DNA of 64,000 nucleotides from the NCBI GenBank assembly GCA_024137785.1, contig JAHRHZ010000085.1, positions 3,031,533-3,095,532 on the forward strand. Reading direction: 5' to 3'. How positions within the stretch are numbered: position 1 is the stretch's first letter; the number at the start of each line of letters is the position of its first letter. The DNA comes from Ginglymostoma cirratum. Lineage: Eukaryota. A program made the translations under genes and the position numbers. Positions 8,753 through 63,961 of the stretch are shown here, one piece after another. Below the pieces are notes generated by a model. It saw nothing but the letters and a program-made list of their open reading frames with translations, had not been told where the DNA came from and did no database searches.

Positions 8753-8807
8753 ATGTCTGTGCATCATTCATTATGGGCTGTCTGTCTGCCGTGAATCTCG
8801 TGTGCAA
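8753..8807 (+). pseudogene. Copy A leader exon with in-frame stop (MSVHHSLWAVCLP*ISCA)
   Basis: 55 nt from ATG to a phase-1 donor (A|gtacac). Same length and nearly the same distance to the V exon (304 vs 303 nt) as the copy B leader MFVSGSLWNCCLLYISYP. Confidence 0.75.
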
Positions 8808-9111
8808 GTACACATTTATTTTGCTAAGCATTCACTCTTCATAGGCAAGACACAATGTGAACTTCCAGCTAGATTTGATAAATTAATGGTTACCTTTTTT
8901 TCAAGTCAGTTATTCCCAGAACTCAGTTGCCACTGGGTATGTCAGAGAAAAAAAAACATTCAATGAGTACAATAGTTTAAAAATGGGAGAATTAGTTGAA
9001 AAGTAAAATGTGGTAAATTGCTGTTGCATCAATAGCCTGGAATAATGATGTAATTTGTGTGGTGCAGACCGTCCTTCTTGTTTAATCTCAGTGTGTTTCC
9101 TTGGTTGACAG

Positions 9112-9420
9112 TTGCTGTTAGCATTTCGGCCAAAGTAAATTCGGACCTAACACGGAAAACCGTGCAGAGAGGTTCATCAGTTCTCATGCAATGTCCTTTC
9201 TCCTTCGAGTTCGACTATTCAAATGTTGTTGCTCACTGTTGGAGAGAAGGTAATGATACCTTTCTGCAGGAGGACAGCAAAAAGCTCTTCCGTGTAATTA
9301 GAGGAGAAGCCAACCTTAAAATTCTAAATGTGACTGTCCGCGACGCTGGAACATATCACTGTGCAGTCAAATATCAGCATCGAACAGTTGTGAAAGCTGC
9401 TGTGCAACTTACTGTATATG
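9112..9420 (+). CDS. Copy A Ig V-set domain exon
   Basis: acag| acceptor and G|gtaagt donor, phase 1-1, open 309 nt. Reads ...VLMQCPF...HCWREG...LKILNVTVRDAGTYHCAV...VQLTVY, with B-strand Cys, C-strand Trp and DxGxYxC. Confidence 0.9.
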
Positions 9421-9619
9421 GTAAGTGTCACCTCAGATAAACACGGAGCCCTAGCTGCTTAAAAACAATCAATAACAGTAAACAAATCAATTTATCAGAT
9501 ATAGACATTTCGTGTAAAATATTTGCAGTTTTTCTGAAAATGAAAAGTGTTCAAGAATGTGGAGACCTTGACGAATCAGTAACACCTCAAAGTTTGAGAT
9601 CTACAGTATATTAGAAATG

Positions 9620-10440
9620 AATCACTCGTGGGATTTGGGCATCACTGGCTGGCCAGCATTTATTGCCTCTGCCTGGTGACCCTTGCCAAGGTGGCAGTGA
9701 GCTGCCTTCTTGATCCACTGCAGTCCATGTGCTGTAAATAGAGTCACAATGCCATTCGGGAGAAATGACAGGTTTTTGACTCAGGGACCGTGAAGGAACA
9801 GTGATATATTTCCATGTCAGGATGGTGAGTGCCGTGGGAGAAACTTGCACTGAGTGGTGTTCCCATATACTTGCTGCTCTTGCCCTTTTAGTTGTTAGTG
9901 ATTGTAGGTTTGGATAGTGTTCTCTCGGGTATTTTGGTTAATTTCTGCAATGCATCTTAAAGTTACACAATATCGCTGCTAAGTGCCTGTGATGGAGTGG
10001 TCGAATGTGTTGCCAATTAAGTGGGCAGCTTTTTACTGGATGATGTCAAACTTCTTGAATGCTTTTGGACCTGCAGGCGTGCAGGCAAATGGGGAGCATT
10101 CCAACACACTCCTTACTTGTGCCTTGTCGATGGTGAACAGGCTTTGGGGAGTCAGCAGTCGAGTTATTCGCTGCAGTATTCCCAGACTCTGACCTACGGT
10201 TCTATTTATATGGCTCGCCCAGTTCTGTTTCTTATCAATGGTAACCCCTCAAATGTCGGTAGTGGGGAATTCACTGATGGTGATGCCACTGAATAGTAAG
10301 GGGCGGATATTTAGATTATTTCTTATCGGAGATGGTGTTTGCCTGGCATCTGTGTGCCCTGCACGTTCCTGTCGACTTTTCAGCCCAAACCCGGATGTTG
10401 TCCAGTTCTTGCTGCACTTGGTCAGAGGATGCTTCAGTTT
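9620..10440 (-). mobile_element. LINE 3' fragment in the copy A V-C1 intron
   Basis: Co-linear with 32790-33325 and with the reverse complement of ~27100-27640. Confidence 0.65.
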
Positions 10441-10927
10441 TATGCATTTGGCTTTTGGAGGGAAATTGACTGCAATACTTTGAAGTTTTTATTTTGTCGT
10501 TGAATATGGAGTGACAGAATGAATATCCCTGAAATTATGTGTGATATTTTGAAGTGTTTAATGCATCACGAGAAAAACCGAACTCTCAGTCCCATCACTT
10601 GGATAGATTTTGTTAAATTCCTCGGATCCAGGTCCAATTCCTCATCCTGTTGGCAAAAGAAAGGTGCAGTATGACAATTCAATCATGTTTCTATTATTAA
10701 GTAGAAACAAATTCTTGAAACTCTTTTTTCGAAAATGTAGGTGGTATATTGAATGGACTTGAGGGGATTTTTTTCAATGTGGTAACGTAGTATCTGTTTC
10801 ATGAACTGTTCATAGCAACAATTAATGTGACTCTCGTGCTGAAATAAATTGTTTTGTTCACTTAAAAAGTACATTTTTGCAGGAGATGTAAAGTCGTTTT
10901 ATCTCTTCTCTGTTATTTACCATTCAG

Positions 10928-11239
10928 CTCCACCAGCTCCTCTGAAAATTGTCTCTGTGCCATCTGAAGAACTGTTTTGTGCTTCTCTCCGACTCCAGTG
11001 CAGGACGTCTGACTTTTACCCAAAAGCCTTTCACCTTACTTGGCACAAAAATGGTGCTATCATATTGACAGGAATTAGGAATAAACAACAGGCAAAAACT
11101 GAGAATCTTTATGAAGTCATCAGCACCTTGGAGTTGCGAGAGGCAGTTGAGAGCGGGACAGTTTACACCTGTCAAGTATATCACGTTTCAAGCTCATTTC
11201 CAGCAAATGCCAGTTATACTGTTACTGTTGCGAATAAAA
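10928..11239 (+). CDS. Copy A Ig C1-set domain exon
   Basis: ttcag| acceptor and A|gtaaca donor, phase 1-1, open 312 nt. LQCRTSDFYPKAFHLTWHKNG...YEVISTL...YTCQVYHVS carries the C1 motifs CxxxxFYP, W and YxCxVxH. Confidence 0.9.
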
Positions 11240-11554
11240 GTAACATTTCATAACATGTGGTACATTGAATGAACACGTATCAACAGGTTATGGTAAATAT
11301 GTAGAAAGTGGTTATGACAGTTTGCAAGTGATTATATGAAAAGACAATTATTTGCATGTGATTGTGTCAAAGTTGAAATTAGGCCCTATTGTATGGATTA
11401 AGTTTTCTTTCTTCCTGCTGTTTGGAGCTGATACGCAGTTATCACAAATGACTTTACCACAACTGGATTACAGTCTTCAACATAGGTCATCCAATTATTT
11501 TGTTCATACACTGACGACTGTCAAAGGGCTGTGTGGTCAATGTTCATTCTTAGA

Positions 11555-12808
11555 AAGGTCAGGCCGCATTGGAGTATTGCATGCAGTTCTGGTCATTCCA
11601 CTATAGGAAAGATATTATTAACTAGAAAAAGTGCAAAAACGATTTCCTACGATGCTACATGGGCTGCAATGTTTGAGGTGTAAGGAGAGATTTGATAGGC
11701 TGGGACTTTTTTTCAGTGGAGCACAGGGGCTCAGGGTAACCTGAGAGGGGTCTGTAAGCTCATGAGAAGCAGAGATAAGTAGACAGCCAACAGCTTTCCC
11801 CCATTGATTGATGTCCATGTGCATAGATCCCTGAAAGTTGCCACCCAGGTTGACAGGGTTGTTAGGAAGGCGTACGGTGTGTTAGGTTTTATTGGTAGAG
11901 GGATTGAATTTCGGAGCCGTGCGGTCATGTTGCAGCTGGACAAAACTCTGGAGTGGCCGCACTTGGAGTATGCATGCAGTTCTGGTTGCCGCATTCTAGG
12001 AAGGATGTGGAAGAATTGGAAAGGGAGCAGAGGAGATTTACCAGGATGTTGCCTGGTATGGAGGGAATGTCTTATGAGGAAAGGCTGAGGGACTTGAGGC
12101 TGTTTTTGTTAGAGGGAAGAAGGTTAAGAGGTGACTTAATAGAGACATACAAGATGATCAGAGGATTAGATAGGGTGGAAGTGATAGCCTTTTTCGTCGG
12201 ATGGTGATGGCGAGCACGAGGGGACATAGCTTTAAATTGAGGGGTGATAGATATAGGATAGATGTCAGAGGTAGGTTCTTTACTCAGAGAGTACTAAAGG
12301 CTTGGAATGTCCTGCCTGCAACAGTAGTAGACTCGCCAACTTTAAGCGCATTCAAATGGTCATTGCATAAACATATGGATGATAATGGAACAGTGTAGGT
12401 TAGATGGGCTTCAATTTGGTTTCACAGGTCGGTGCAACATCGAGGGCCGAAGGGCCTGTACTGCACTGTAATGTTGTCTGTTCTCTGTTCTATGCTCTAT
12501 GGTAGAGGTGTCTAAATTTAGAGAGCATAGGATTAAGATGAGAGAGAAGACATGCAAAAGAGTCCAGAGGAGCAATTGATTCAACACAGCAATGAGGATG
12601 GTCTCTTGAATGAGCTGTCAGATTTAATGATGGAGGCGAGTACAATTTTGCCATTTAAGAAACATTTGGACAGGTACATGGATGGAATGGGTACAGAGGG
12701 ATATGGACTAAATGCAGGCGTGTGGGACTCGTTTAATTGTGAAAACTGGGCAGCATGGACAAGTTGGGACGACGGACCTGTTTTCATGTTGAAATCTCTA
12801 TGACTGTA
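11555..12808 (+). mobile_element. Two nested CR1 3' fragments (younger 11806-12495 inside an older one)
   Basis: The older element (LEYCMQFWS...IIKLEKVQKRF) breaks near 11805 and resumes near 12497. The insert encodes VDRVVRKAYGVLGFIGRGIEF...LERxQRRFTRMLPG and has its own ttct/ctat tail. Confidence 0.8.
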
Positions 12809-13385
12809 TGAAATAGCTCCACTCAGGATCGTTGTATGAAATAGCTCCAGACAGTCCAGCCGATTTTCGCCATTCATCAGAATGACACATACTCGATTTG
12901 ATGCTAAACATTGATTCAGTGCTGAATTGTCTGTCGCTGCACAGAGATTAAAATCATTTAAACTAAAGTTTACCTCCACAAGTAACTCAAGCAAATCTGA
13001 AAACAGGTTTCATTATGTATTTTTTCTGACTTTGATCAGTATGCAATCCAGTTAAACTCCCACCAAATAATTTTATATTTTGTGTCTTAGCTTTTCGAAC
13101 TGAACACTGATTGCAATTAGCTCTATTTTCACTAATTTTAAATTTGTCATTAATTGAGTTACTTTTATCGTTTACCTATTTCTCTAATTTCCAGACATTT
13201 TGTTTCTGATTGTGTACAGATCAGTTGAACAAAGATACAGCAAAATTGAAATGCTGAGGCTTTATGTACTACGTTTATCATATGTGTAAGGCAGTGCAAT
13301 TGAGAATGGTGCACCTGACATTTTAACCTGAGTATCTTCTGCTTATATTGCAACTCCTCTGTTTGAATGTACATTAACATAACAG

Positions 13386-13499
13386 AATTTGCCTCTAAAA
13401 TCAGTGTCACTATGGCCGCTGGTTGTGCTGCTGGTGGTCTTGCAATTCTAATATTGGCCTTGATGATCGCAAAGGGTCTTCTGTTCTTTATCATCAAAA
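13386..13499 (+). CDS. Copy A transmembrane exon (KFASKISVTMAAGCAAGGLAILILALMIAKGLLFFIIK)
   Basis: aacag| acceptor and A|gtatga donor, 114 nt, phase 1-1, hydrophobic. Same length as the copy B TM exon. Confidence 0.85.
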
Positions 13500-13545
13500 G
13501 TATGAACAGGAATGAAATCTCACACTGAAATTAACATTATTGGGA

Positions 13546-13579
13546 TCTGAACTCTGAACTCTGAACTGAACTCTGAACT
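13546..13579 (+). repeat. (CTCTGAA)n short tandem repeat
   Basis: tctgaactctgaactctgaactgaactctgaact. Confidence 0.8.
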
Positions 13580-13932
13580 AATTTAAGCAACTATTTTAAG
13601 AGAAATCTCTTTCAAATAGATACCTTCCCTCACATTAAATTATCAAATAAGAACATTTGAACTTTTCAGTTTGCAAAGTTGTATCGGTGTCGATCAAAAT
13701 TGTGATGGTGAAATTCATTGCTGATAGAAGTTTCCATAGCTTCAACCTTCAAAATATAACTTCAAAGTAATTGTGTGTCACATTTAGAGCTATATTGCAA
13801 AACTATTGTCCTACTGTACCCTGTTTGTAATTGCAAAATACTAGTTGACTTGCTTTTGGTTTCTTCGGTTTGATGAGAAATACAAGTATCAACTGTTTTT
13901 TTTTGCCAAAGTCTGTCATTTTTATTTCACAG

Positions 13933-13980
13933 GATGGGGAAAGAATAAAATCAATAAATCCAACTCAACATGAAGATGTG
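13933..13980 (+). pseudogene. Copy A juxtamembrane linker exon, frame-shifted with donor lost
   Basis: The homologous frame reads DGERIKSINPTQHEDV (copy B: GSKEKVRNPTQHKEE). The available acceptor cacag| gives RWGKNKINKSNST* after the phase-1 TM exon. The donor position reads ctgagg instead of gtaagg. Confidence 0.65.
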
Positions 13981-14498
13981 CTGAGGCAAATTTCCGATAT
14001 TCTATCTATTTTGATTTTGAAGTGTCGTTGAACAATTCAAACTAGGAGCCGAAATGCATATTCCCAACATGTCAAGATAAGTCTTGACGATTTCATCAGC
14101 TCTCAGAAGCACAATTTCAGCTGAATAAAACCAAAATAAAGGAAAAAGAAAGTTGTAGTAAGTTTCACAAACAGGTGCAACTATTTTAAACAGTCAAAGA
14201 TGTGTTTAAATATGTAAGCTACGTCAGTTAACTTACGCTGCTACTTTCAAATGTCAATCACAGGTTCGAAGCTGACAAAAAGTTTTGATTTTTCTTTTCT
14301 TTGGTTATTAACAAGTGACAGTGTGCTGAATAATTTTTCCATAATGATTACAGACATTATCATCACTGTTGATTACGTTGGGCTGATGACTATTTTGAAA
14401 GGTAGATTTCGAGTTGCAAGGAGAGGTTTGTGTTCTCTCCTTCCTTTTTATGCTGTTCAAACTTAAGAACAGAATATATTGTGCAGACAGCTTGCACA

Positions 14499-14658
14499 AG
14501 TTGGAGGAACACAGCAGGCCGGCAGCATTAGAGGAGCAGGAAAGTTGATGTTTCAGGTCAACTTTCCTGCTCCTCCGATGCTGGATGGCCTGCTAGGTTC
14601 TTCCCGCTCCGCACCGTGTTGTCTCTGATTCCAGCATCTGCAGTTCTTGCTTTCTCTG
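14499..14658. mobile_element. Hairpin Penelope-terminus-derived short element with 10-bp TSD
   Basis: gaggagcaggaaagttga / tcaactttcctgctcctc inverted arms. agcttgcaca at 14489-14498 and 14659-14668. Confidence 0.75.
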
Positions 14659-15358
14659 AGCTTGCACATGTTGGCTTCCTGAGACAACTTTTACTGTAGG
14701 ATGCATCTCTGCTAGTGCAACATGCAACAGATCTCCGCTCCCTTGAAACAGAAATAGATGAGCTATTGTCAGGGAAATTTCTCTCGTTTTTAATTTTCAA
14801 AAAGTGGATATCAGTTCCATGTGAGAGGAAGCTCCCTCTCTGTGGCATCTGAAAAGGAGCAGGTAGGACTTATTCATGAATAACTGAGAACAGTTTGTTA
14901 AAACCTGAAAAAAACTAAATCATTTTTGCTGCCTTCAGAGCGTGCATTTGAAGTGCACATGTGGGTATTGACTGCGATTGAATACAGTGCAGACCAGCAG
15001 ATTCAATCCCTTTAAATGCATTTTTAAAACAGTTCAAATCTTTAAATCAATTCAACAGTATTCTTGTCTCAGTTTCAGTCATGGATCTGAATTTGCTTTC
15101 GAAAAAGAATTTTCCCCAAACTCCCTCTCTGACTACAATGTAACTAAATTGTTCGGACTGCCAAAGTCAAGAAAGCTGGTTCACTGCTGGGCCATTAATA
15201 GTAAGCAGTTATTGGCACCAAATGCTGGTCCTGTCACCAAGGCTCTCATGCCATTTAAAATAGTTTGTGGTGCAAAAAAGATTCACTTTTGTCCTGGAGG
15301 TGCAAAAAAAGTTGCATTTCTTTCTTGGGTGTCTTGAGAAAATCAGGACAAAGACTTT

Positions 15359-15482
15359 CTGAAGAAGGGTCCCAACCCGAAACGTCAGCTTTCCTGCTCC
15401 TCTGATGCTGCCTGGCCTGCTGTGTTCCTCCAGCCCCACACTGTGTTATCTGAAACTCCAGCATCAGCAGTTCCTACTATCT
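15359..15482 (+). mobile_element. Penelope-terminus-derived short element with hammerhead motif
   Basis: CTGAAGA-A-GGGT-CCCA-ACCC-GAAACGTC at 15359-15386. Flanked by caaagacttt / caaagtcttt. Confidence 0.7.
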
Positions 15483-16592
15483 CAAAGTCTTTACTGCATG
15501 CCTATATGTCTTTCTGCGAAGTATTGCAGCTGCACTGTTGTACACAACAGGATAAAGTCCTCTGATGTCCCGATGCAACACTTAGCCTGTGTTTTATTGT
15601 TTCATGAATAGTGGATCACATCAAAAGAGAAGGCAAAATTACCTATGATTGAGAAAACCTCACAGAAGACTAAAGAGTAGATGTTATACCAATGAAATAT
15701 TGTGGTTTACTTTTCAGACAAAAGCACACGGTATTTGTCACATTTTGTTCATTGTTACTAACCTGAACTTGTTCCTCCCGAAATAGTTGACATGTTTTCC
15801 AACTTAAAACATCAGTAATTTGCTTTAAAAATACTGCCAGGCATCAATTATCCCCTGAAAATTCTTTGAAAATGCGCCGCACCTTGGTCTTCACTTCAGA
15901 CTTCAATGGCAGTATTTAGACGACCTATTGAAATAATTACCTTCCTTTGTTCATAAGGGAACAGGGTGATTCCAGAAGTCATTTTCCAATAGCAGTGATA
16001 AGTCCAGTTGTTTCTTATCTCTAAATGACTGACGAATATACCTAATTTAACGTGAGGGAATATTAAGTCAAAACCCACATCATACAGGTTTAAATGAATG
16101 AAAGGTGTTACTAATTTGTTTCAAGTAATTGCAATTATAATTTTACTTTGAAACAGTGTGACCTGTGACTTTCTATCGTTATTAAACAAACACAGACATA
16201 TTTATTTTTGCTTCATTTCACAAACTGTCCTGCGTTCTCAATTGGTAGCAGAATGGAAGAAAACAGAATGTCAACTTTCAGAATTTGTAAACCTAATTAA
16301 ATTGAACTTGTGTGAACAACCTTTTCTTCTGCACAATTGCAGCATTTGCCTTGTTACTTTAAATTAAAATTACAATAATATCAATAATATTGAAACAATG
16401 TTTGCTTGTTTTGATTAAGTGTGATATTCCTGGCAAGAAACAGTTCAAAGTGAGAAACTGTGAAGTGTTATGTTTGTAATGAAGTGCTGGTACATTCACT
16501 AAACCAAACTAATTCTCCACGTTAAGAACATACATTAGTCGCTTGACTCTAAAACAAAATAAACTAATAAATGCGAAATCTTGACTTTCTAG

Positions 16593-16703
16593 AGAAAACA
16601 AGAGATGCCTGAGGCTAAACTGACATACGCTGCTCTTAATCTAGTTGGTTCTGAGGATGGCATAATGCCTAAAAATCGGAACGAAATCACAGGACATGCA
16701 GAG
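16593..16703 (+). CDS. Copy A cytoplasmic exon 1 with ITIM LTYAAL
   Basis: ttctag| acceptor and GAG|gtacac donor, 111 nt, phase 0-0. Reads RKQEMPEAKLTYAALNLVGSEDGIMPKNRNEITGHAE. Confidence 0.85.
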
Positions 16704-16846
16704 GTACACTGCAGATAATATGTGTAAAATGTCAATTCATTCATCATAATGAGTTGATTTGGAGATGATGTTGACAATTGCTTTGTGTAATTTTCATCTA
16801 GAATGGTTTAAATGAATGGTAATTCAGTCTCAATTTTATTTTTAAG

Positions 16847-16975
16847 ACAAAACAGAGTATGACAGATAGCAGGCTGACTTCCCTTGCTCTGAAATTCAGT
16901 GATTCCTGTAAATCATCGAAACCCAGACACCAAGAAAAAAGTCCAGTGTATGCAGCAGTGAAAAGCAGCTGCTAA
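16847..16975 (+). CDS. Copy A terminal cytoplasmic exon with ITIM-like PVYAAV
   Basis: tttaag| acceptor. Reads TKQSMTDSRLTSLALKFSDSCKSSKPRHQEKSPVYAAVKSSC*, 43 codons, identical in length to copy B. Confidence 0.85.
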   Translation, partial: TKQSMTDSRLTSLALKFSDSCKSSKPRHQEKSPVYAAVKSSC

Positions 16976-17799
16976 ATTGGGCAAATGAAAATATGCTAAA
17001 AAGATAGAAGCAGAGATTGCATCACAGAGATGTTTATGTTTCTTATCAATTTTAAACTGTTGTTTTCCTCATGTAAGTCTGTCGTAATTGAGCAAAACTG
17101 GAGGTTAATTTCTTCGCTTCAAGTAATGTCACCTGGATCCATTTCATTTCACCTTGAAAATGCAACCGTTACAACTAACAATCTTAATTCAGTTATTTCC
17201 AACCGGTGAGGTTCTCCGTATTCTCTTTAAACCTGCACAAAGTTCGACCTATGCATCATTAAAATTATTATGAAGTATTTTTCTGTTGTGGTTGTATATC
17301 ATCATATATTTATATTTCCACTTGAATTGGTAACATGATGTTTTCATTCCTTTTCTGCAGTCACTGCATTTTGACCTCGAAATGATGGGCTTTACTGTGA
17401 CAAATGTTCACAAGATTTCTGTTAGTTAATTGTCTTTAACTTGTTTATGTTTCACTGTCTTTTCTGGCATGAATTGATAGTTCATTCTGCTTCCATTGTG
17501 GCAGTAGTTTTAATGCTGTTTGTCCTCTTGCTGTTATTATGACAATGGTCGTATTGATTCTTAAATATCCAGAAGGCTGAAGAGATCCAATTGCCAATCT
17601 GCCTAATATTTTGATGGTTCATTTTGGTCAGTTAATTTGCTTAAATTAATAATTGGCAGTTTCTTCTTCAAATTTTAATTCAATGTAGAGTGGCACTGTG
17701 CCCAGAGAGAGCAGACCATTCTTGATCCCCCATTGTTTAGCATTGCACTCTCGTTGTAATATGATATAGTAGGATGAGATGGAATGACTCATGAATGGA

Positions 17800-19868: not shown

Positions 19869-19869
19869 C

Positions 19870-22800
19870 TAAATTCAAAGCAATCCTGAATCTCAAACTC
19901 CAGGCAATGAAAACACAAATATTGCACAAGACAACATTTAACCACCAACAAACAAATGTACATTGAAGCCAGACCACAAAGTGTTAACAGAAGATGATAA
20001 ACTGAACCAATTGTATCAAAAAGCGTACATAGAAGAAGAATTTGAGTGTATTCCCAAATGTTACTATCTTAAAAATGATGTTTTACTGAACAAATAGAGA
20101 CCATCACATAACTGGGCAGATGAGAAATGAGCAGAACTTCATGAGGTTGTATTATCACTGGGTTATAGAATGGAGTTGTTGCAGGTAGCGCATGAATTAC
20201 TAGTTGGAGGTCATTTAGGGGTAAGGAAAGCTCAAGCCAAAATTAAAAGCCATTTTTACTGACCTGGATGTTGTTGAGTTTTGCCAAGCATGTTATACAT
20301 GTCAGGTAATTGGAGAACCTCAGGCACTAATAAAGCCAGCACATTTAATATCCATTCATGTATTCGCGGAAACTTTCACAGGGGTCTTAATTGATGGAGT
20401 AGGATCCCTACCTAAAACAAAAAGTAGGAATGAGATTTTGTCATTCAACAATGGATGTGTGCGCAGATTCCCACAGGCCATTCCATTATGCAATATCACA
20501 GCTGAAAGGATTATTGAAGTGTGACCCACAGAGATATAATCAGATCAAGGGTCAAATTTGACATCAATATTATTCAGGGAAATTATGGATAGCTGAGGAA
20601 TAACATATTTCAAATCCACTGCGAACCATTCTGAATCACAGGGAGCATTAGAAAGCTGGGCAAAAAAAAAAGAAAATTACAGGTCATGTTAAGGGCTCAT
20701 CGTCAAGACTATTCAAACGATAGAGATAAAGAATTTTTTTTGGATTTTTTGCAAAGAGGGATGTACCAAATGAATTGACCAAATTCAGTCCATTGGAATT
20801 AGTTTTTGGGCATGAGGTGAGAGGATCACTGAAATTTACTCAGGAGAAATTGGTGAGTTAAAATTCAGAGATCACATATTTGGACTGTGTGTCAAAATTT
20901 AGGGAATAATTAAATAGAGCGGGGGAGTTGGCCAGACAACATTTAAAAGTAGCACAGCACATGATGAAGCAGAAAGTAGACAAAAAAAAAATCAGAGTTT
21001 TGCAACTTTGCTGACAGAGATGAAGAGTTAGTGTTACTTCCAGTGACAGGTGAACCTTTAAAGGGAAGGTTTAGCAGACTTTATCAAATCGAAGGGAGAT
21101 TGAGTGAAGTGAATTATTCGATAAGGATTTCAGATAGAAAGAAATCTCACAGAGTATGTCATGTGACTATACTAAAAAGGTATTTTGGTAAGGATTGTAA
21201 GCAAAAGGAGAATGTTTTACTGGTTACAACACAAAATGAAGAACCAAGTTCAGAGGATTCTGAATTGGACATTCCTCTAATCAAATTGGATAATGAGGAA
21301 GTTCTCGGAAACTGGGATAATTTACTGTGTTACTTTCCAGAGGGAAATCAAAATGACCTGAAAGAATTAATACTATTGCATGGGGAGATATGTGGGAATA
21401 AGATGAGAAGTACTAATTTGATTACGCATGATGTAGATATAAGAAATGCTGTTCCAATTAAGCCACATTCTCATAGACATATCCCTCTAAAGTTGTCACA
21501 GGTTCAAAAAGAGAAATGAACACACGCTCCAAGACAACATAATCAAAGTGAGTTGCAGTGACTGGAGCTCACCCATAGTAATGGTGCCAAAAGCAGATCG
21601 TACCCAATGACTCAGTGTAGGCTATTGCAAAGTCAATGCAGTGACAAAGTCTGATTCATATCCGATTCCAAGTTTGGAAGACGGTATTGAGAAGGTGGGC
21701 CAAGCAACTTATATTTCCAAGTTGGACTTACTCAGAGGATACTGGCAGGTACCTTTATCCAAAACAGTGAAGACAATTTCAGCTTTCATCCCACCAAATG
21801 TGCTATACCAATTTAAAGTCATGCCATTTGCTATTAAAAATGCACCAACTACATGTCAAAGACCAACCAGTAAAGTAATTTCTGGATTCCGCAGTTGTGT
21901 AGGAAACATCAACGACCTGGTGATACTTAGTCACACGTGGAAGGAATATTTGCAGCGTTTGTCAGAATTCTTCGATCAACTTTGGGAGGCAGGTTTGTTG
22001 ATAAATCCGGCTAAGGGTGAATTTGCCAAAGCCGTTCCTGGGATGTTGTCGGACGTGGACAGATGGCCCCACAGAATGTGAAAATAAAGGTTATTGAGGA
22101 GATTCCCATAACATCGTCGAAGAGAGCAGGACTACAATTCCAGGGATTGAACGGGTTTTATTAGAAATTCAAATTTTAGCAGTATGGTTGCTTCACTGGC
22201 TGACTTATTGGGAAAGTGCAGAAAATTTCAGGGATGGCAGACTGTCATAAGGCGTTGATAGCCTGAAAGCTGTGATGACCACTGCCCCACTGTTAGCCAC
22301 TATTCAAGGTGGCTGTCGATGTGAATGATGTGGGTGTCAGCGCTGTACTCCTCCAAGAAGATAATGAGAAGATAGAAGAACTGATCAGGTATTTCTCCAG
22401 GAAACTGAATATTCATCAACAGATATATTCCATGATTGAGAAGGAGACCTTGAGCTTGGTGTTGGCGTTACGGTATTTCAACGTTCCTATTTTCAGTAAT
22501 GTGTCTGAGACAATTGTCTACACTGATCAGAACCCATTAAAGTTTTTGGAGCAATTTAAGGACAAGAATTCCAGACTGTTTAGGTGGAGCTTATTATTTC
22601 AGCCATTCAATTTGAAAATGACACACATGGCTGGAGGAGAAATCGTAATTGCTGACACGTTGTCACATCTTGGATGAAGAAAGGCGGAGGCATTTGGTGG
22701 CAGGAGTGAACGGACTGAAATAAAATGTGGCAGTGAATGTTTGCTTGCTGAGATTCAATGTATTGCACGTATATTGTAGTGTACTAATAGAGTAAGACCA

Positions 22801-36966: not shown

Positions 36967-37095
36967 TCAGCTGCTGGCTTTCACCGCTGCATACAATGGA
37001 GTTGCAGCTGTGTGTTCTGGCTTCATTGTTAACCTGGGACCATTCAAATTCAGAGCAGCAGAAGTCATCTGGCATTTGTTCATGCTCTGTTTGGT
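36967..37095 (-). pseudogene. Copy B terminal exon with PLYAAV
   Basis: ttacag| acceptor. Reads TKQSMNKCQMTSAALNLNGPRLTMKPEHTAATPLYAAVKASS*. Confidence 0.85.
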
Positions 37096-37234: not shown

Positions 37235-37345
37235 CTCTGCATACACTGTTCTTTCATCCTGTGGCTGAGGATTTTTAGCATCCTTTGAATGGACCAGTTC
37301 AAGATCAGCATACGTTAATCTGTCTTCAGCTCTTCCTTGTTTTCT
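37235..37345 (-). pseudogene. Copy B cytoplasmic exon 1 with ITIM LTYADL and second motif TVYAE
   Basis: ctcag| acceptor and GAG|gtacct donor, 111 nt. Reads RKQGRAEDRLTYADLELVHSKDAKNPQPQDERTVYAE. Confidence 0.85.
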
Positions 37346-41027: not shown

Positions 41028-41071
41028 CTCCTCTTTGTGTTGAGTAGGATTTCTTACTTTTTCCTTTGAAC
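41028..41071 (-). pseudogene. Copy B linker exon (GSKEKVRNPTQHKEE), intact
   Basis: caccag| acceptor and GAG|gtaagg donor, 44 nt, phase 1-0, which joins the TM exon to the tail in frame. Confidence 0.8.
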
Positions 41072-41508: not shown

Positions 41509-41622
41509 CTTTAGTTATTATTAGGAGAAGACACTTCACAATCGTCGCTGTGCATAATAGAATTGCAAGTGCTCCAATAACAGATCCAGCAACAACAGCA
41601 ACAATGCTTTTTAAGGCAAAAT
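41509..41622 (-). pseudogene. Copy B TM exon (xFALKSIVAVVAGSVIGALAILLCTATIVKCLLLIITK), intact
   Basis: aatag| acceptor and G|gtacga donor, 114 nt, phase 1-1. Confidence 0.85.
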
Positions 41623-46232: not shown

Positions 46233-46334
46233 AACGAGATAACAAGCATGGGGCTGGATGAACACAGCAGGTCAAGCAGCATCATAGGAGCAGGAAAACT
46301 CGACGTTTCGGGCCTAAACCCTTCATCAGAAAAT
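46233..46334 (-). mobile_element. ~100-bp hammerhead-motif element with 13-bp TSD
   Basis: Minus strand CTGATGAAGGGTTTAGGCCCGAAACGTC. ggttgtatgacct at 46220-46232 and 46335-46347. Confidence 0.85.
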
Positions 46335-50182: not shown

Positions 50183-50494
50183 TCTTCCCTTCTTTTGTGA
50201 CAGTGTAGCTGGCATTAACTGGAAATGTGATCGAAACGTGATGTACTTGACACATGTAGACTGTGTCACTTTCGGGTATATTTGGCACGTCCAAGGAGCT
50301 GACCACTTCATAAAGTCCGTCACCTCTCGCCTGTTTTACATTTCTAAATCCAGTGGTGATTTGTGTACCGTTTCTGTGCCATGTCAGGTTATCGTCTTCT
50401 GGATAAAAGCCAGATGTCCTGCATTGCAGCTTGAAAGAAGCAGATGAAGTGTCTTCAGAACGTATTTATACAAGTTTTAGAGAAGCTGGAGAAG
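50183..50494 (-). pseudogene. Copy B C1 exon, disrupted
   Basis: ASPASLKLV*IRSEDTSSASFKLQCRTSGFYPEDDNLTWHRNG...YEVVSSL...YMCQVHHVS...NASYTV. The homologous donor position is TT, with the GT 2 nt further on. Confidence 0.85.
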
Positions 50495-51170: not shown

Positions 51171-51466
51171 CGTAGACATCAGGTTGCGATGCGTGTTTGT
51201 CATCAACCGTTCTGTGCTGATTTTTGGCTACACAGTAATATATTCCAGCATCCAGGACAGTCACATTGAGGAGATGAAGGTAGGCTCTACGTTTCATGAC
51301 TTTGAAGAGATTTTTGCTGTCTTCCTTCAGAAGCATCTTATTACCTACCCGCCACCAGAAAGGTTGATTTCGAAGGAGAAATCGCATCGCAGGATCGCTG
51401 TTGTATTGATCAGGGCCTTTGTTTACATAATATTCAGAGCAGCATTGTCCAAAGTGCACACAGCAA
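51171..51466 (-). pseudogene. Copy B V exon, disrupted
   Basis: VAVCTLDNAALNIM*TKALINTTAILRCDFSFEINL, then a frameshift, then WWRVGNKMLLKEDSK...LHLLNVTVLDAGIYYC...DVY. Length 296 nt is not a multiple of 3. Confidence 0.85.
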
Positions 51467-51769: not shown

Positions 51770-51824
51770 CTGGATATGAAATATACAATAAACAACAGTT
51801 CCACAATGATCCACTCACAAACAT
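51770..51824 (-). pseudogene. Copy B leader exon (MFVSGSLWNCCLLYISYP), intact
   Basis: ATG to G|gtacag, 55 nt, phase 1, 303 nt upstream of the V acceptor. Confidence 0.75.
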
Positions 51825-54426: not shown

Positions 54427-54563
54427 AGATAGTAGGAACTGCCGATGCTGGAGTCTGATATAACAGAGTATGGATCTGGAGGAACACGGCAGGCCAGGCG
54501 GAATCAGAGCAGCAGGGTCCCGACTCGAACGTCAGCTTTCCTGCCCCTCTGATGCTGCCTGGC
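54427..54563. mobile_element. Hairpin Penelope-terminus-derived element with TSD
   Basis: cttcaaaatatcat (54413-54426) / cttcaaaatattat (54564-54577), with inverted arms. Confidence 0.7.
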
Positions 54564-55775: not shown

Positions 55776-55873
55776 AGAGATAACAAGCATGGGGCTGGAT
55801 GAACATAGCAGGTCAAGCAGCATCATAGGAGCAGGAAAACTTGACGTTTCGGGCCTAAACCCTTCATCAGAAA
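55776..55873 (-). mobile_element. ~100-bp hammerhead-motif element with 13-bp TSD
   Basis: Nearly identical to 46233-46334. atgtggaaagatg at 55763-55775 and 55874-55886. Confidence 0.85.
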
Positions 55874-56044
55874 ATGTGGAAAGATGTTGTCTATCAGAAG
55901 CAAATGCAAGTGAAGAAGGGAAAATAAGAATAAGGGGAATGAGGGACAGAGAAAGGCACAACGGGCAGCAAGAGACACTGAAAAGGAATATATTACCAAT
56001 CATGATAATGTACTCCAAAATTAACAAAAAAGAAAAAACCTAAA

Positions 56045-57500: not shown

Positions 57501-58005
57501 CATGAAGTCAATAGCTGAGTGGAAATTGAACTGAGTATAATTGAGTTCGTTATGGAAGGACCAGTATTAGCACTGTGGATGTCAGCCAACTTTTTACATA
57601 TGAAGAAGACGATCTTGATAGGGCAGTAATGGGTTGGGTTGGATTTACCCTGTGTCCTTTCCTCAGAGGAAATAAAAATCCTCATCTCTGTCCAAAAATG
57701 CAACCACTAATTTTAAAACAGCATCCTCGGCATCTGGACTCACCCTCCCTCTATGGAAAATAAAATGGTGCATACATAGTACATACGGAGGACGCAAATT
57801 AGATGAAGTAATACATAGAAAGATAATACACAGAATATAGAGTGTAGAAAGGTAATTTATAAAATAGATGGAGTGTCCTAGGAAAACATAATGGCAGAAG
57901 TTAATCATGAATGTAATAATCGAAAAAGCACAATATCTTAGGGTAGAAAACCACTGTGGCTAACAAGTGAAGCAGAAGATGAGCAGCCTTGAAGAGATAA
58001 CAAAC

Positions 58006-58113
58006 GCTAACATAATTGGTCATACTGATAACTTTGGAAAAACATGATAACTGAGAAAAGCTAACATAATTGGTCATACTGATAACTTTAGAAAAACATG
58101 ATAATTGAGAAAA
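58006..58113. repeat. 54-bp tandem duplication
   Basis: gctaacataattggtcatactgataacttt.gaaaaacatgataa.tgagaaaa starts at 58006 and 58060. Confidence 0.9.
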
Positions 58114-60389
58114 GGTATAAAGAAGAATAGGCCCTGAGGGGCGTGGGCGATCTGAAAACTGCATTCTGATTGTCACAGCTTTTACTTGCAAATAAAAGTT
58201 TACGTTATTGAATACTTCTCTACGTCTCCTGGTGATTCTCCACGACACCTCATGGCAGGTATAAAACACAGAGAACGCTGGAGAGAGAAAGAGAGAGAAT
58301 GTTTGAATCTGGTATGACTTCTTCAATCATATCAGACTTGAAATGTTAACACTGTTTTTCTATTCACAAACCTGCTGAGTTTCTCTTGAAATTTCTGTTT
58401 TCATTTGTTGCAATTTTCGATATTGTCTGGTAGAATCTAGTAACGCTGCTGTGCTTGAACAGCTTGTCAAGGGACCCCGACATATCTGGAGTATATGTCT
58501 TCAGTACTATTGCTGGACTGTTGTCAGGGCCAATAACTTTTGCATCATTTAGTCATATCATGTAGAGTGAAATGAATTCGCTGACAACTAGCATTAGTGA
58601 TGCTTTAGACATTTTGAAGAGGTCAGTAAGCCCATCCACTCAGCACTTCTGGCTGAAGTTTGTTGGAAATGATTCAGCGTCATCTTTTGCAAAAAAATGT
58701 GTTGGATTCCACATCAAAAAGAGTGAGAATATTTGTGGAGCCGCCTACTCCAGTAAGTTGTTTCATCGTTTAACACCTCTCATAACTGGATGTGGCAGTA
58801 TGTAAAATTACATCCCTGGCCTGGTCGCTGTGAAATTGACTAACCAATTCTATCACTTGCTGCATTTACCATTTGACATGCATGATGTCCTAGCTGCCAC
58901 AGACCAAACGGTATGTAGTTTGGGAATCTGGGTGATGACTTTTGGAGAATTTCACAACAAGTAGTTGAAAGACATCACAATGATGGCTGCAAGTTTCACT
59001 TTGTAATGTCAGAGGAATATTGCTTTACATCGCCGTCTGTGCCTCACCTGAGTTTCTCTAAAATAGACATAACTATGGTTATCCAATCACGTTAAAGAAT
59101 CAATTAGCTCATAACCAAGTTTGTTTCATTTTTCTCATCTTCACTGCTACTTTGGCTGATTCTCCAAATTGTTTAAAAATACTTCTCTTTTCTTTTGTAC
59201 AACCATGCAAGAATTGAAGTTTCTGAATCAATCTAATTGCTCACAATGGATCTGTTACCAACAGTGCTGTAAGTAAAATAGAAGACCACTTTAAAGTCCA
59301 TATTGGATCCAGTCTAAAATGTTGATGTCCAAGTCTCTCTTCGATACATTGAATCCTGACTCACACTTTGTCTCTTTGTGTTGCATTTGAAGAGATATGA
59401 CTACCCCCAGGATAACAAGGTGCAGAGCTGGATGAACACAGCAATCCAAGCAGCATCAGAGGAGTAGGTAAGCTAACGTTTCAGGTCTGGACCTTTCTTC
59501 AGAAAAAATGAACCCACTCTCTATGACTTCATCTATATCTCTTATCTTCTGACAGTCATCCATCTCTATTGAAACCCCTGACTATTCCCTTTATGGAAAC
59601 TTAAACAATGAAGCAATTTACTTACACTTATCCAATTTACTGTCAATGATGGGAACAGTTTCCTCCATCTGCTCCATCCAGAACTCTCATTATGTTGAAC
59701 ATTGTAACAGATTCCCTCTTGACACACTTCTCTACATGCAGACCAATTCCAAGCTCACCAATCTATCCTCATAACTGAAGTTCATCAGCCCTGCAACATT
59801 TCTTGTAACTCTTGTTTACAATCTCTCCGTTGCATTCACATCTTCCTCTAATGTATTTTCCAAAATGACTACCATTGTCTGGCTGAAGTCTAATGCATGT
59901 TTTCTGTATGTTCATGTATTTATGTGCTGAGTATGTTCAGCATCAGCTCCTTGCTCTTGCACGCTATTCCTCCATTCGTAAATACCAGAATACTCTCTAC
60001 AAGCGGCTTTGGATGAAAATATATTGTCACAAATTTTTAGCGTCTGATCTTCTCCTGCGAGACTGTCATAGAATGTTGGCTCGAAATCATTGGTGGATTA
60101 AGAATGCCACATTGGCCTCAAATGTGTGGATGATGGGCAACAATTTTTTGAACATACTTTGACAATAATATTTTGCAAGCAGATTGTCAGCCATTAATTG
60201 AAACCAATAAAACAGTCATCAAAAGGATGGATTCATGAAACATTGTTGAAAGAAAATAACTCTTTGAACAAATTTTTAAGCGAAATGAAGGCTTATGAGT
60301 GGACAGTCGCTGAATAAAATGTATAAGCAAAGATATGTATAATACACACATTGCTTGGATCTTTTAAGCACATTCTTGTTTTCGTAATT

Positions 60390-63300
60390 TAGCATCTGAT
60401 TTGCAGCCGTTTATAATGAAATTGTTCCTTTGTGTTTGGTTGTTGACAATAGCTGGGACCCATTCAAATTTGAGCAAAGTAATCGCTTTTTATTGTCTGT
60501 TGTGCTGTGCTTTCGCTGTGAACACAGTGTGTAAAATAATTTCATATTTCCTCAAATAACATTGAAGACAAAGTGTTAAACAAAATTCCAGTCTCATCTC
60601 AAAACTACCTTTTTCGAATGAACCCAATAAATGTGCCTACACAAATCTTGAGAAAAGCAATACATTTTTGTACAGAGTCTTTTCTTCTGTTTCAGAAATC
60701 CATTGTCCTTTGAATCTACCAGATCAAGGACAAGATATATCAGTTTGTCTTCATCTATATATCATCTTTTATGCTGTTCATGTTTATCATCCGTTAAGTT
60801 TATTTTCTGAAGTCAAGAATGAAGCATCCATATTGTAATCAACATTTGCTATGTTTGGCTTTGCTAACAAAAAGTACAGCCTTAATCGTCTCAAGTGTCT
60901 GTTCCAATCTGCTTCTCGCCAGTGGACAAAGAGTTTAATTTTGTTTCATCTCAGAATAAACTTCATTTTTAATATGATGAAAATCAGCAGAAGAGCTGTG
61001 TCCGCATCCAGTTCCCTGGAAAACAAAATGCTTTTTTTCTCCCCATCATTTTGAAATTTAAATGTTTCAGATGAGAAAAATCTTCGACAAAATCACACTC
61101 TGTCATGATCTGATGAAGAACAATTTATATCGAAATTAAAATGGAATTTGTTTAAATTTACATTGAAAATATTTTTGAATAACCTTTTACTACATTCAGA
61201 AAGAAAAGTGAAAAATGCCAACTGTGTGAATTGACTTTTCTCTCCATGGATACTGCCTGACCCGCTGTGATCACCAGCACTTTTTGTTTTCAGTGACTTT
61301 TCTTCCTCTTTACCAATGTATACACAGTGCAGCAACTGCATTAACACGAGAGTTCCCCCATATGCAGAGTTCACTGTTTTCACATATGATCATTAGAGCT
61401 TTAAAAAGGGTTTAAACACCTATTAAGACGTAAAACACACATGAAATAAGTTGAGTCCCTGCAAGGAAAAGGTGTTTACGTCAATAGCCCATCCAGAGAC
61501 AATGTCTGAGAAATTTGAAAGTTGAGGTGAAGGTCCAGTGTATTTCCACAGAATGCTCGAGAGACACGTGAAATTGCAAAGCATTCTCTGCAGTTGTCAA
61601 CTTCTATTTGGTAGTTTCTTCATCAAGTTTGGAACGTGTCCCAGTAATACAACGGGGAACATGGCCATGTAGATTGCAACGAAAGAAATTACCATTATCC
61701 GTGTTAGCTCTTTATTGTCTCCAGAACAAATCAAGAAAATTAACTGCTGTTTCAATGCTCTCTGATTTTGATAATGCTGCTCAATAATATGAAATGCTTG
61801 AATCTGTAACTGGAGAGCTGCATGTGAAACAATGAAACTTTTCAGACAGATAGGATTTCTGTTTTTATATCCTTTAATTACCAACATTCAGATCTCTAAA
61901 CGAGTAAATTTGTGCAGTTGTATGGAACTGCCCTGTTGAGAATTTAATTCAAACAATTTTAATGAAAAATAAATCTGGTGAATAAAGAATAACAGCAGCA
62001 ACCGAGACCAAAACTCTAAACAAAAGAAAACAGAAAGAACTGCAGAAGCTGGAAATCAGAAACAGAAACAGAAATTGCTGGAAAATCCCAGCCAGTCCGT
62101 CAGCACTTGTGGAGACAAAACAGCGTTAACATAGCAGATCCAGTGACCATTCTTCAGAACCAAAACTCTGTTGAGCTCTTTTTAAGAATCTAATTGCGCC
62201 AAAGATGTGTATTAAGGAAAACAATCCCACTGTTCCCACCCGGAGCTCATTGTAGTCCCAAACTAAAGTGTGTGATTGTTATGTTTGTTTTGAAGTAGCT
62301 GTCACCATCTTTCTGTTTTATCAACATGTTCTCAGCTGATCACAAATACGTCCAGCTTTGCCCTTTCCATGAAGTTTAAGCGATCTACTGTTCTTGACTT
62401 TCTCAGCGTCATTCATGTTCCGAGGAGTAATAAACGCACACCACAGCTGCAAATTGATTTTTTTTCAAGCTTCTCACAACTACAGCTTATTGTGCTGACG
62501 GAGAGAAGATCCTTCATGGACAAATTGATGAAGCAATCCAGCTTGTGAAAGAGACAGCGTGCACACCATAAGTAATGATTTGCTGGAGTGTGTCTCTATG
62601 AGTTAATAATAGAGCAAAGGGCATGGAATACACTCATGCAAATGGTGCATGAAGGAGGCTGTCATTATTGAGTTTACTTTCAGCTACAGGTCTATCATTC
62701 AGAAGGAGTGTACCTTCTTGATAACGTTCCTGAAAAAATCTGTTCTCCCCCCTAGCATGGTATAGCTTGGTATTCACAAAGGAACCAGCAAAGCGGCCTT
62801 GCAAATTGCAACTGACAGTTAACAGTTTGAAACATCTGAACATCATGGGTTAAAAGTGAAAATATGTCTATTTTATGAGACTTTATACAAGTGTTTCAAA
62901 TATCTCAATTTTTAGTGAAACGTATCATACAGCTAGATTGCAAAACAAAGCTGATGCAGCAAACAAAATAGTCTTACCTTCCATTCTTGTTGGATTTTTT
63001 ATTTATTTTCTGCGTGCGTGGTGAGATACAAAATTTGTATGAGTTGACAAGAGAGTGTTGATGTTTGCATCTCTGCGCAAGCCAATGAAACTGAATGTTT
63101 TTTTTGGGTGTAAGTTTTAAATTTGGCAAATATTTTTCAATATATCTCAATATCATGGAGATGAATACATTTATGAAATGAGATTTTATGAGTTGAAACT
63201 GCGGAAACACCTTTTTTAACTGAAGTTCACGCGTGCAGGTGTAACTCTGTAACGGTCCGATTCAAGTCTAATATTTGATTTGAAGCAAATCATGTGTTTT

Positions 63301-63961
63301 GACGTATTTTCACCTCCAATGGTTATTCTAATTGTCCAGTGCAGAATTTGGGATCCCTATTCTGTGAAACTTCATGGCAAATTTTCCTCAGTACCTGCCT
63401 GTTAAATATTTCATTTAACATGGATATTACCATCCATATCGTTGAATATAATGAATAGAAACGCTTCCCGATCACAGTGGTGAGCATTATAATTGCAAAC
63501 GCAACACGGACATATCCAATGATCATAACCGCGTTGATTTTCGATGCAAATGTTGTAAGGTTGATGTAAAAACAAAAGTAGAAACTGGAGCATAAAGCAG
63601 ACATAAACAGACCTGAATATCACATTCACAAACCATTGTTTTTTTTAATATTACGTCTTGGTCATAAGGTTGTACATTCTTTTGCAACAGTGTAACTGAC
63701 ATTTGCTGGAAATGAGCTCGAAACATGATCTCCTTGACAAATGTCAACAGTGCAGCACTCGCCTGGGCCTGACACATCGAAGGAGGTGAAAAACTCACAA
63801 CATCCGTTGCTGTTTACTTGTTCATTTCGAAATCCAACCAAGATTTTTGTATCATTTTTGTGCCAAGGAACACTGAAGTTATTTTGGTCATTGGCAGAAG
63901 TCCTGCAGAGATAAAGGTTTTTCTGACAATACTAGCACAATTTTCAAGTGATCTGGTGAAG
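60390..63961 (-). pseudogene. Copy C: heavily decayed paralog (C1, TM, linker and tail remnants; V and leader would lie beyond the window)
   Basis: C1 63961-63670 (ASPDHLKIV.../CRTSA...WHKND...ICQGDHVSSSFPANVSYTV, frameshifted). TM 63552-63440 (TFASKINAVMIIGYVRVAFAIIMLTTVIGKR; acceptor AA, donor AT, 113 nt). Linker 63017-62978. Tail 1 from 60773 (HKR*YIDEDKLIYLVLDLVDSKD). Tail 2 from 60515, with TAA 60413-60411 at the Tyr of LYAAV. Confidence 0.8.

What the first reader, a model, noticed from the sequence alone, without database searches (positions are those of the whole stretch)
8753..63961. Tandem cluster of non-rearranging V-C1 receptors with a SIRP-alpha-like tyrosine-motif tail in a probable shark
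Seen in the sequence: three paralogs share one exon plan (55-nt leader, V, 312-nt C1, 114-nt TM, short linker, 111-nt and 129-nt tail exons) with conserved phases and conserved short introns (L-V 304/303; TM-linker 433/437/422; tail 143/139). Most exons are absent from the ORF track. Established knowledge: germline V joined to C1 is confined to a few families (SIRP, tapasin, B7-H6-like, antigen receptors), and LTYADL is an ITIM found in human SIRP-alpha. Inference: this is part of an expanded, fast-turnover inhibitory receptor family with a one-V-one-C1 ectodomain, relevant to the ancestry of antigen-receptor-like V-C1 molecules. I cannot tell whether it is already described.
Basis: partly seen in the sequence, partly recalled or inferred. 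Interest (0 to 1): 0.8.

Follow-up and report, generated by a model that had tools for sequence, protein, structure and literature searches.

The report
Dead shark SIRP-like V-C1 receptor genes
This stretch of shark DNA holds three broken copies of a cartilaginous-fish immune receptor gene family that resembles mammalian SIRP; the family looks real, large and unnamed, but the copies here appear non-functional.

Summary
The exon plan is real. Copy 1 (+, 8753-16975) and copy 2 (-, 51824-36967) each have a 55-nt leader, a V-like exon, a C1 exon, a 114-nt TM exon, a 44/45-nt linker and 111- and 129-nt tyrosine-motif tail exons. Copy 3 (-, from ~63990) is a decayed partial copy.

All three look dead. 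Copy 1 has a leader stop, has lost the Trp that every aligned relative keeps, and has a linker frameshift that cuts off the tail. Copy 2 has stops in V and C1, a V frameshift and a GG at the C1 donor. Copy 3 is eroded throughout.

They belong to a discrete family of sharks, rays and chimaera (about 80-90 sequences retrieved). Intact gene models exist in zebra shark. The family has long ITIM/ITSM-tailed members and short-tailed members with an Arg in the TM. NCBI labels them inconsistently as SIRP-alpha-like, SIRP-beta-like, B7-H6-like, tapasin-like or Ig-lambda-like. I found no held paper describing the family.

SIRP-alpha is the best non-chondrichthyan sequence match and is collinear through the TM and four-tyrosine tail. 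But there is one C1 rather than two, the C1 clade lies outside SIRP, and B7-H6 is the closest solved ectodomain.

Earlier notes of this scan report the same family, with intact transcribed members, elsewhere on this chromosome. I did not check those notes.

The parts
8753..8807 (+). Copy 1 leader exon (55 nt, phase 1) with in-frame TGA at 8792-8794
   Evidence: It is homologous to the open leader of copy 2 and to the leaders of zebra-shark P0156 and whale-shark P0001.
9112..9420 (+). Copy 1 V/I-set exon, open, but the family-invariant Trp is Cys (TGT 9237-9239)
   Evidence: Pfam V-set 7e-10, I-set 5e-7. 76% identical to zebra-shark P0152/P0156. The Trp column is invariant in A1 and at least 90% W in A2.
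10928..11239 (+). Copy 1 C1-set exon (312 nt), open
   Evidence: Pfam C1-set 1.4e-12. 91% identical to whale-shark P0001.
13386..13499 (+). Copy 1 transmembrane exon (114 nt), open
13933..13977 (+). Copy 1 linker exon (45 nt). It is +1 relative to the 44/47-nt linkers of relatives, so reading from the TM phase hits TGA at 13971-13973.
   Evidence: The same truncated C-terminus (KINKSNST) is in whale-shark P0001.
16593..16703 (+). Copy 1 tail exon A (LTYAAL kept; second Tyr replaced, TGHAE)
16847..16975 (+). Copy 1 tail exon B (first Tyr lost, LTSLAL; PVYAAV kept; stop)
51770..51824 (-). Copy 2 leader exon (55 nt), open
51171..51466 (-). Copy 2 V exon (296 nt): TAA at 51425-51423 and a frameshifting deletion near 51360
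50189..50494 (-). Copy 2 C1 exon: TAA at 50468-50466; donor at the orthologous position reads GG
   Evidence: 82% identical to zebra-shark P0153.
41509..41622 (-). Copy 2 TM exon (114 nt), open
41028..41071 (-). Copy 2 linker exon (44 nt), open, phase 1 to 0
37235..37345 (-). Copy 2 tail exon A (LTYADL ITIM, TVYAE(V) ITSM-like)
36967..37095 (-). Copy 2 tail exon B (PLYAAV; stop)
63677..63990 (-). Copy 3 decayed C1 remnant (frameshift, FYP motif lost, many substitutions)
63431..63550 (-). Copy 3 TM-like remnant (acceptor AG lost)
60389..60785 (-). Copy 3 tail-exon remnants (LIYLVL; stops)

Best explanation
The window holds three relics of one receptor gene type. Copy 1 is on the + strand. Copies 2 and 3 are on the - strand, in tandem with each other and convergent with copy 1.

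The gene type belongs to a multigene family of cartilaginous fishes: signal peptide, one short V-type domain with a J-like last strand, one C1-set domain, a transmembrane helix, and a cytoplasmic tail built from repeated 37-codon exons. Each repeat carries an ITIM (LTYAxL) and an ITSM-like motif (TVYAE).

Inferred, not shown: in intact family members the phosphorylated tyrosine pairs (23-24 residues apart) would recruit SHP-1/SHP-2-type phosphatases and dampen activation. Short-tailed relatives with an Arg in the membrane helix would pair with ITAM adaptors. That would make the family a paired inhibitory/activating system like SIRP-alpha/SIRP-beta. The ligand is unknown.

In this window none of the three copies can make that protein:
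- Copy 1: leader stop, lost structural Trp, linker frameshift that removes the tail.
- Copy 2: two stops, a frameshift and a damaged splice donor in the ectodomain exons.
- Copy 3: eroded throughout.

This looks like the death side of birth-and-death evolution in a large receptor cluster.
For: - Exon maps and lesions.
- Domain identity.
- Discrete family: single-C1 scores of 52 bits or more for 78 proteins against 38 or less for everything else. The C1 clade has 99% SH-aLRT support and the subclade holding the window copies 97%.
- Intact zebra-shark counterparts P0152 and P0153 have four-tyrosine tails joined to V-C1 in the gene models. Heterodontus P0013/P0151 and Callorhinchus P0176 are also intact.
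- Taxa span sharks, rays and chimaera.
- Of 90 retrieved family proteins, 69 have a TM. About 28 have long ITIM/ITSM tails and about 14 have short tails with a TM Arg.
- The Trp lost in copy 1 is invariant in 21 of 21 relatives.
- Copy 1's truncated C-terminus is shared with whale-shark P0001.
- The P0013 model gives two confident Ig domains and a TM helix.
Against: - Expression could not be tested. The only runs offered were two tiny contig sets that covered repeats only.
- Copy 1 keeps open V, C1 and TM exons with intact splice sites. A tail-less product from an unseen alternative leader is not excluded.
- Phosphatase recruitment and adaptor pairing are inferred from motifs alone.
- The stops could in principle be assembly errors or alleles. 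Three or more independent lesions per copy, one of them shared with another species' model, argue against that.
Confidence: 0.85

Rival explanations
1. Copy 1 is not dead. It is a conserved tail-less (SIRP-gamma-like or decoy) member whose frameshifted linker gives a short 13-residue cytoplasmic end.
For: The V, C1 and TM exons are open with GT-AG sites. The same C-terminal end (KINKSNST, stop) is in the whale-shark model P0001, so the truncation predates the split from that lineage or is retained. An alternative ATG at 8773 with an acceptor at 9092 would give an open signal-like peptide (my reading).
Against: There is an in-frame TGA in the leader that is homologous to those of copy 2, P0156 and P0001. 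The Trp invariant in all 21 aligned relatives is Cys. The tail exons downstream have lost two of four tyrosines, as expected of unconstrained sequence. The whale-shark model itself skips half of V.
Confidence: 0.1
2. The family is the cartilaginous-fish B7-H6/B7-type ligand family rather than a SIRP-type receptor family.
For: B7-H6 is the best solved match to the two-domain model (Z 15.6, rmsd 2.5 A over 181 residues, 27% identity), followed by ICOS-L and PD-L1. NCBI names several members NCR3LG1-like.
Against: The Z lead over Fab light chains is only about 1.5 and partly reflects the predicted interdomain angle. SIRP-alpha, but not B7-H6, is in the top 60 of the profile search of solved chains. 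SIRP-alpha is the best non-chondrichthyan hit of the profile search, collinear through TM and tail. The family consensus has a J-like GNGTGxxLxV strand, repeated ITIM/ITSM tails and Arg-TM partners, which are features of paired receptors.
Confidence: 0.15
3. The lesions are assembly or sequencing errors and the genes are intact.
For: No independent reads of these exons could be laid.
Against: There are at least three lesions in each of copies 1 and 2, of different kinds (nonsense, indel, missense at an invariant site, splice donor). Copy 3 is diffusely decayed. One lesion is shared with another species' protein model.
Confidence: 0.03

Closest known systems
SIRP family (SIRP-alpha/beta/gamma; PTPNS1/SHPS-1)
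   Same: Non-rearranging N-terminal V with a J-like strand, followed by C1-set. TM, then a tail with tyrosine pairs (xTYAxL ... xxYAxV) 23-24 residues apart and ending just after the last motif. Inhibitory long-tailed and short-tailed basic-TM members in one family. Rodent SIRP-alpha is the best non-chondrichthyan hit (127 bits), aligned collinearly from C1 through TM and tail. SIRP-alpha and SIRP-gamma rank high among solved chains.
   Different: One C1 domain instead of two. Domain 1 is a short 7-strand V. The family C1 clade excludes all SIRP-labelled C1 domains, and its sister group is unresolved. V and C1 profiles score SIRP no better than Ig domains. The tail is built of 2 to 6 repeated exons. 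Synteny and CD47 binding are untested.
B7-H6 (NCR3LG1) and other B7/butyrophilin ectodomains
   Same: V plus C(1-like) two-domain ectodomain. Best structural superposition of the whole ectodomain model.
   Different: B7-H6 did not appear among the top profile or word-search hits. The tail architecture, J-like strand and paired Arg-TM members are not B7 features (established knowledge, not tested here).
UrIg / UrIg2 (non-rearranging shark VJ-C1 genes; PMC12227049)
   Same: Germline VJ joined to C1 in cartilaginous fish. UrIg2 is a high-scoring solved chain.
   Different: UrIg2 has nine C1 domains and forms Fc-like homodimers. Here there is a single C1 and an ITIM tail. Multi-C1 shark proteins fall on the Ig side of the C1 tree.
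Ig light chains / TCR chains
   Same: V-C1 layout. Lambda and mu constant domains are among the best C1 matches.
   Different: No split V/J and no recombination step. Signalling tail present.

Membership tests
SIRP family | N-terminal V-set domain with J-like G strand, encoded unrearranged in one exon | tested here: inconclusive
   V-set passes Pfam's cut-off and the family consensus has GNGTGxxLxV. But the domain is short (Cys-Cys 56 residues, 7 strands) with I-set best matches. The GxG is degenerate in the window copies and their zebra-shark counterparts.
SIRP family | [quoted passage not shown] | tested here: not met
   There is one C1 exon between V and TM in copies 1 and 2. Nearly all family proteins have a single C1.
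SIRP family | Cytoplasmic tail with paired tyrosine (ITIM) motifs | tested here: met
   Copy 2 has LTYADL, TVYAE and PLYAAV. Intact relatives have 4 or more tyrosines. The tail is collinear with the rodent SIRP-alpha tail: z 7.3, and no shuffle of 2000 reached the observed score. Phosphatase binding is not testable here.
SIRP family | Paired activating members: short tail, basic residue in TM | tested here: met
   About 14 retrieved members have short tails and a TM Arg, e.g. P0014, P0155, P0157, P0039. None is in this window.
SIRP family | Domains nest within SIRP in phylogeny | tested here: not met
   The family C1 clade (99% SH-aLRT) excludes all SIRP-labelled C1 domains and its sister is unresolved. 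No V tree with curated outgroups was possible.
SIRP family | Conserved synteny with the SIRP cluster; CD47 as ligand | not testable with these tools
There is no binding assay.
B7-H6 / B7 family | IgV-IgC ectodomain superposable on B7 structures | tested here: met
   3pv7_A Z 15.6, rmsd 2.5 A, 181 residues, 27% identity; ICOS-L 15.5; PD-L1 14.5. The lead over light chains is about 1.5 Z.
B7-H6 / B7 family | Sequence-level membership (closest named relatives are B7) | tested here: inconclusive
   CD276 is the only B7 in the top 60 solved chains (3e-19), below SIRP-alpha at 5e-24. No B7-H6 appears in the profile word search, which is limited by its word index.
UrIg / UrIg2 | VJ followed by three or more C1 domains | tested here: not met
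   Single C1. UrIg2 architecture is from PMC12227049.
Rearranging antigen receptors | V and J split, joined by recombination | tested here: not met
   The V exon is continuous through the FR4-like strand to a GT donor at 9421.
Chondrichthyan SIRP-like V-C1 family (unnamed) | Leader, short V with the YWW(K/R) motif, C1 with PxPLKIV...FYP...YTCQVxH, TM, and 37-codon tyrosine-pair tail exons | tested here: met
   Copy 1 groups with whale-shark P0001 and zebra-shark P0152/P0156, copy 2 with zebra-shark P0153.

The most novel reading that the evidence does not exclude
The family is the cartilaginous-fish branch of the SIRP lineage, keeping an ancestral one-V-one-C1 form. That would move the origin of SIRP-type paired receptors to the base of jawed vertebrates and give a living non-rearranging VJ-C1 membrane receptor close to the presumed precursor of antigen receptors. 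A 2022 review states that the origins of SIRPs are unknown and lists them only in mammals, birds and lizards (PMC9652883).
Probability: 0.3. Interest if true: 0.6.

Novelty: new variant of a known kind. Interest (0 to 1): 0.35.

Why it matters
Non-rearranging V-C1 genes are few and are used to reason about how antibodies and T-cell receptors arose. SIRP-type checkpoint receptors have no established history before amniotes. A large SIRP-like paired receptor family in sharks, rays and chimaera would make both questions testable.

This window itself adds only dead copies. They show that the cluster evolves by gene death. They also give datable lesions, one of which is shared with whale shark.

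Tried and rejected
- **Expression.** The one run search listed two very small contig sets. Laid on 10990-16989, they covered only dispersed repeats (11.4-12.8, 14.4-14.8 and 15.2-15.6 kb) and no exon. This gives no evidence either way.
- **Protein atlas.** Closed.
- **UrIg/UrIg2 identity.** Rejected on architecture and on the tree.
- **Activating-type TM exon hidden in the long introns.** None found.
- **Discrimination of SIRP from Ig.** Separate V and C1 profiles could not tell them apart: 41-53 bits against 46-48 bits for C1, and 18 bits or less for every V.
- **Rfam scan of the window.** Nothing found.
- **Literature.** Searches on UrIg, SIRP plus cartilaginous fish, VJ-C1, B7H6/NKp30 in shark and PRARP found no description of this family. 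Flajnik 2012 (B7H6), Ohta and Flajnik 2015, Flajnik 2023 (UrIg) and Dornburg and Yoder 2022 are not held, so prior description there cannot be excluded.
Full report
**Observation**

A tblastn of the two obvious ORFs against the window found V-like sequence at two places and C1-like sequence at three. Reading the DNA gave complete exon sets for two copies. A script confirmed lengths, splice dinucleotides and intron sizes.

| Exon | Copy 1 (+) | Copy 2 (-) |
|---|---|---|
| Leader | 8753-8807 | 51824-51770 |
| V | 9112-9420 | 51466-51171 |
| C1 | 10928-11239 | 50494-50189 |
| TM | 13386-13499 | 41622-41509 |
| Linker | 13933-13977 | 41071-41028 |
| Tail A | 16593-16703 | 37345-37235 |
| Tail B | 16847-16975 | 37095-36967 |

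Copy 3 (-) is a partial, eroded copy. It has a C1 remnant at about 63990-63677, a TM-like stretch at about 63550-63431, a linker-like stretch at 63009-62979 and tail remnants at about 60785-60389. Its V would lie beyond the window end.

Between copies only the exons align, at about 70% nucleotide identity. Pfam gives V-set 7e-10 and C1-set 1.4e-12, both above the curated cut-offs.

**State of the three copies**

Compared with intact relatives:

- **Copy 1.**
  - There is a TGA at codon 14 of the leader (8792-8794). Copy 2, zebra-shark P0156 and whale-shark P0001 have sense codons there.
  - A Cys (TGT, 9237-9239) replaces the Trp that is invariant in all 21 aligned relatives.
  - The linker is one base longer than the frame allows, so reading from the TM exon stops at 13971-13973.
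  - The tail exons downstream have lost two of four tyrosines.
  - The whale-shark model P0001 ends with the same short peptide. The truncation is therefore shared with that lineage.
- **Copy 2.**
  - TAA in V (51425-51423).
  - A frameshifting deletion near 51360.
  - TAA in C1 (50468-50466).
  - GG where the C1 donor should be.
  - Its TM, linker and tail exons are still open and keep LTYADL, TVYAE and PLYAAV.
- **Copy 3.** Decayed throughout.

I conclude that the window holds three pseudogenes. The residual possibility that copy 1 makes a tail-less product is listed as a rival.

**What family it is**

A full HMMER scan of 1.84 billion representatives with the copy 1 C1 exon returned many 250-450-residue proteins that have one C1 at about residues 120-225. 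Per-domain rescoring shows a clean gap. 78 proteins score 52 bits or more, and everything else scores 38 or less.

Names and taxa:

- **Sharks:** Heterodontus, Stegostoma, Rhincodon, Hemiscyllium, Chiloscyllium, Scyliorhinus, Carcharodon, Cetorhinus, Mustelus, Heptranchias.
- **Rays:** Pristis, Hemitrygon, Hypanus, Mobula, Narcine, Amblyraja.
- **Chimaera:** Callorhinchus.
- **NCBI labels:** SIRP-alpha-like (the commonest), SIRP-beta-1-like, SIRP-gamma-like, NCR3LG1-like, tapasin-related-like, Ig lambda-like, TCR beta-like, MHC II beta-like, or uncharacterized.

Full-length members share the following layout:

- a leader;
- a short V with a YWW(K/R) motif and, in most, a J-like GNGTGxxLxV strand;
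- a C1 with PxPLKIV, FYP and YTCQVxH;
- a TM;
- a tail of repeated LTYAxL ... TVYA(E/Q) modules.

Zebra-shark P0152 and P0153 are intact counterparts of copies 1 and 2, with four-tyrosine tails. Of 90 retrieved family proteins, 69 have a TM. About 28 have long ITIM/ITSM tails and about 14 have short tails with an Arg in the TM helix. This is the pattern of paired inhibitory and activating receptors. No activating-type TM exon is present in this window.

**Tree**

A C1 tree of 76 domains used IQ-TREE quick search on 103 columns.

- All family domains and the three window copies form one clade (99% SH-aLRT).
- The window copies sit in a 15-row subclade (97%).
- Copy 1 sits next to whale-shark P0001, then zebra-shark P0152/P0156.
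- Copy 2 sits next to zebra-shark P0153, and copy 3 beside that pair.
- The duplications therefore predate the split of these sharks. What is lineage-specific here is gene loss.
- SIRP-labelled C1 domains, Ig heavy-chain domains and multi-C1 shark proteins all fall outside the family. Their order relative to it is unresolved.

**Comparison with known families**

Evidence for SIRP likeness:

- Rodent SIRP-alpha is the best non-chondrichthyan hit of both word searches: E 1.5e-11 with a single query and 127 bits with the profile.
- The profile aligns it in two collinear stretches. The first runs leader-V-C1. The second runs C1-stalk-TM-tail with the tyrosine motifs in register (also BLASTP).
- Tail-only local alignments against SIRP-alpha give z 7.3 (Callorhinchus P0176) and z 7.2 (P0080). 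No shuffle of 2000 for P0176, and one for P0080, reached the observed score.
- Such motif pairs could also arise by convergence on tandem-SH2 binding.

Evidence against membership:

- There is one C1, not two.
- The C1 clade lies outside SIRP.
- V and C1 profiles score SIRP no better than Ig domains.

Structure:

- An AlphaFold model of Heterodontus P0013 has two confident Ig domains and a TM helix.
- Its best solved superposition is B7-H6 (Z 15.6, 2.5 A over 181 residues, 27% identity), then ICOS-L and PD-L1. Fab light chains follow about 1.5 Z lower.
- A model of the copy 1 V exon has seven strands. It matches I-set domains, IgNAR V, NKp44 and B7 V domains equally well, at Z 12-12.7. This agrees with the short Cys-Cys spacing and the I-set sequence hits.

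UrIg2 scores high among solved chains but has nine C1 domains.

I file the thing under an unnamed chondrichthyan family that works like, and may be related to, SIRP. I do not file it as a SIRP family member.

**Literature**

In the held library I found no description of this family. A 2022 review says SIRPs are known from mammals, birds and lizards and that their origins remain unknown (PMC9652883). The UrIg2 and shark MHC papers discuss non-rearranging VJ-C1 genes but not this family. Several relevant subscription papers are not held.

**Earlier notes of this scan**

These are unchecked AI notes. They report the same family at several other places on this chromosome piece:

- intact, transcribed members about 242 kb and about 800 kb before this window;
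- a cluster about 78 kb before, with one live and three dead copies;
- another cluster about 366 kb beyond.

They agree with my reading and suggest that the window is part of a cluster of more than 1 Mb. I could not test them.

**Limits**

- Expression and synteny could not be tested.

Noticed in passing
window 21031-22677 (+): Ty3/gypsy-type retroelement remnant: ORFs with reverse transcriptase (RVT_1, 2e-15) and RT RNase H (4e-23) domains.
   Followed up: partly
window 27685-28760 vs 45573-44519; 26301-26728 vs 28954-29385; 29498-30448 vs 39890-40834: Large repeat family with long ORFs on both strands in a GC-rich (0.55), strongly G-skewed block at 28-32 kb. One pair is an 87% identical inverted copy over 1.08 kb. 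The ORFs I scanned have no Pfam hit.
   Followed up: partly
window 15356-15482, 26009-26106, 46236-46335, 55777-55876, 59411-59506 and others: Dispersed repeat of about 100 bp (80-98% identity) that piles up thousands-fold in the two small runs laid. Another first-reader note (s1-879938) calls these hammerhead-ribozyme units, but an Rfam gathering scan found no family in the window.
   Followed up: partly
window 2911-2976 and 4725-4933 (+): The odd N-terminal 107 residues of the zebra-shark gene model P0152 match these stretches upstream of copy 1 at 57-77% identity. Either the upstream region is syntenic between the species or both hold the same repeat. These look like spurious 5' exons of the model.
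   Followed up: no
proteins P0014, P0155, P0157, P0178, P0039, P0071, P0113, P0137 (other sharks): Short-tailed family members share a conserved TM pattern: YR(S/T)xxGxL near the outer side and (D/N/E)H at the inner end. This suggests a specific adaptor interface.
   Followed up: partly
window 11390-12790: The 2146-nt C1-TM intron of copy 1 holds an inserted repeat that accounts for most of its size. Copy 3 has only about 130 nt between the C1 and TM remnants.
   Followed up: no
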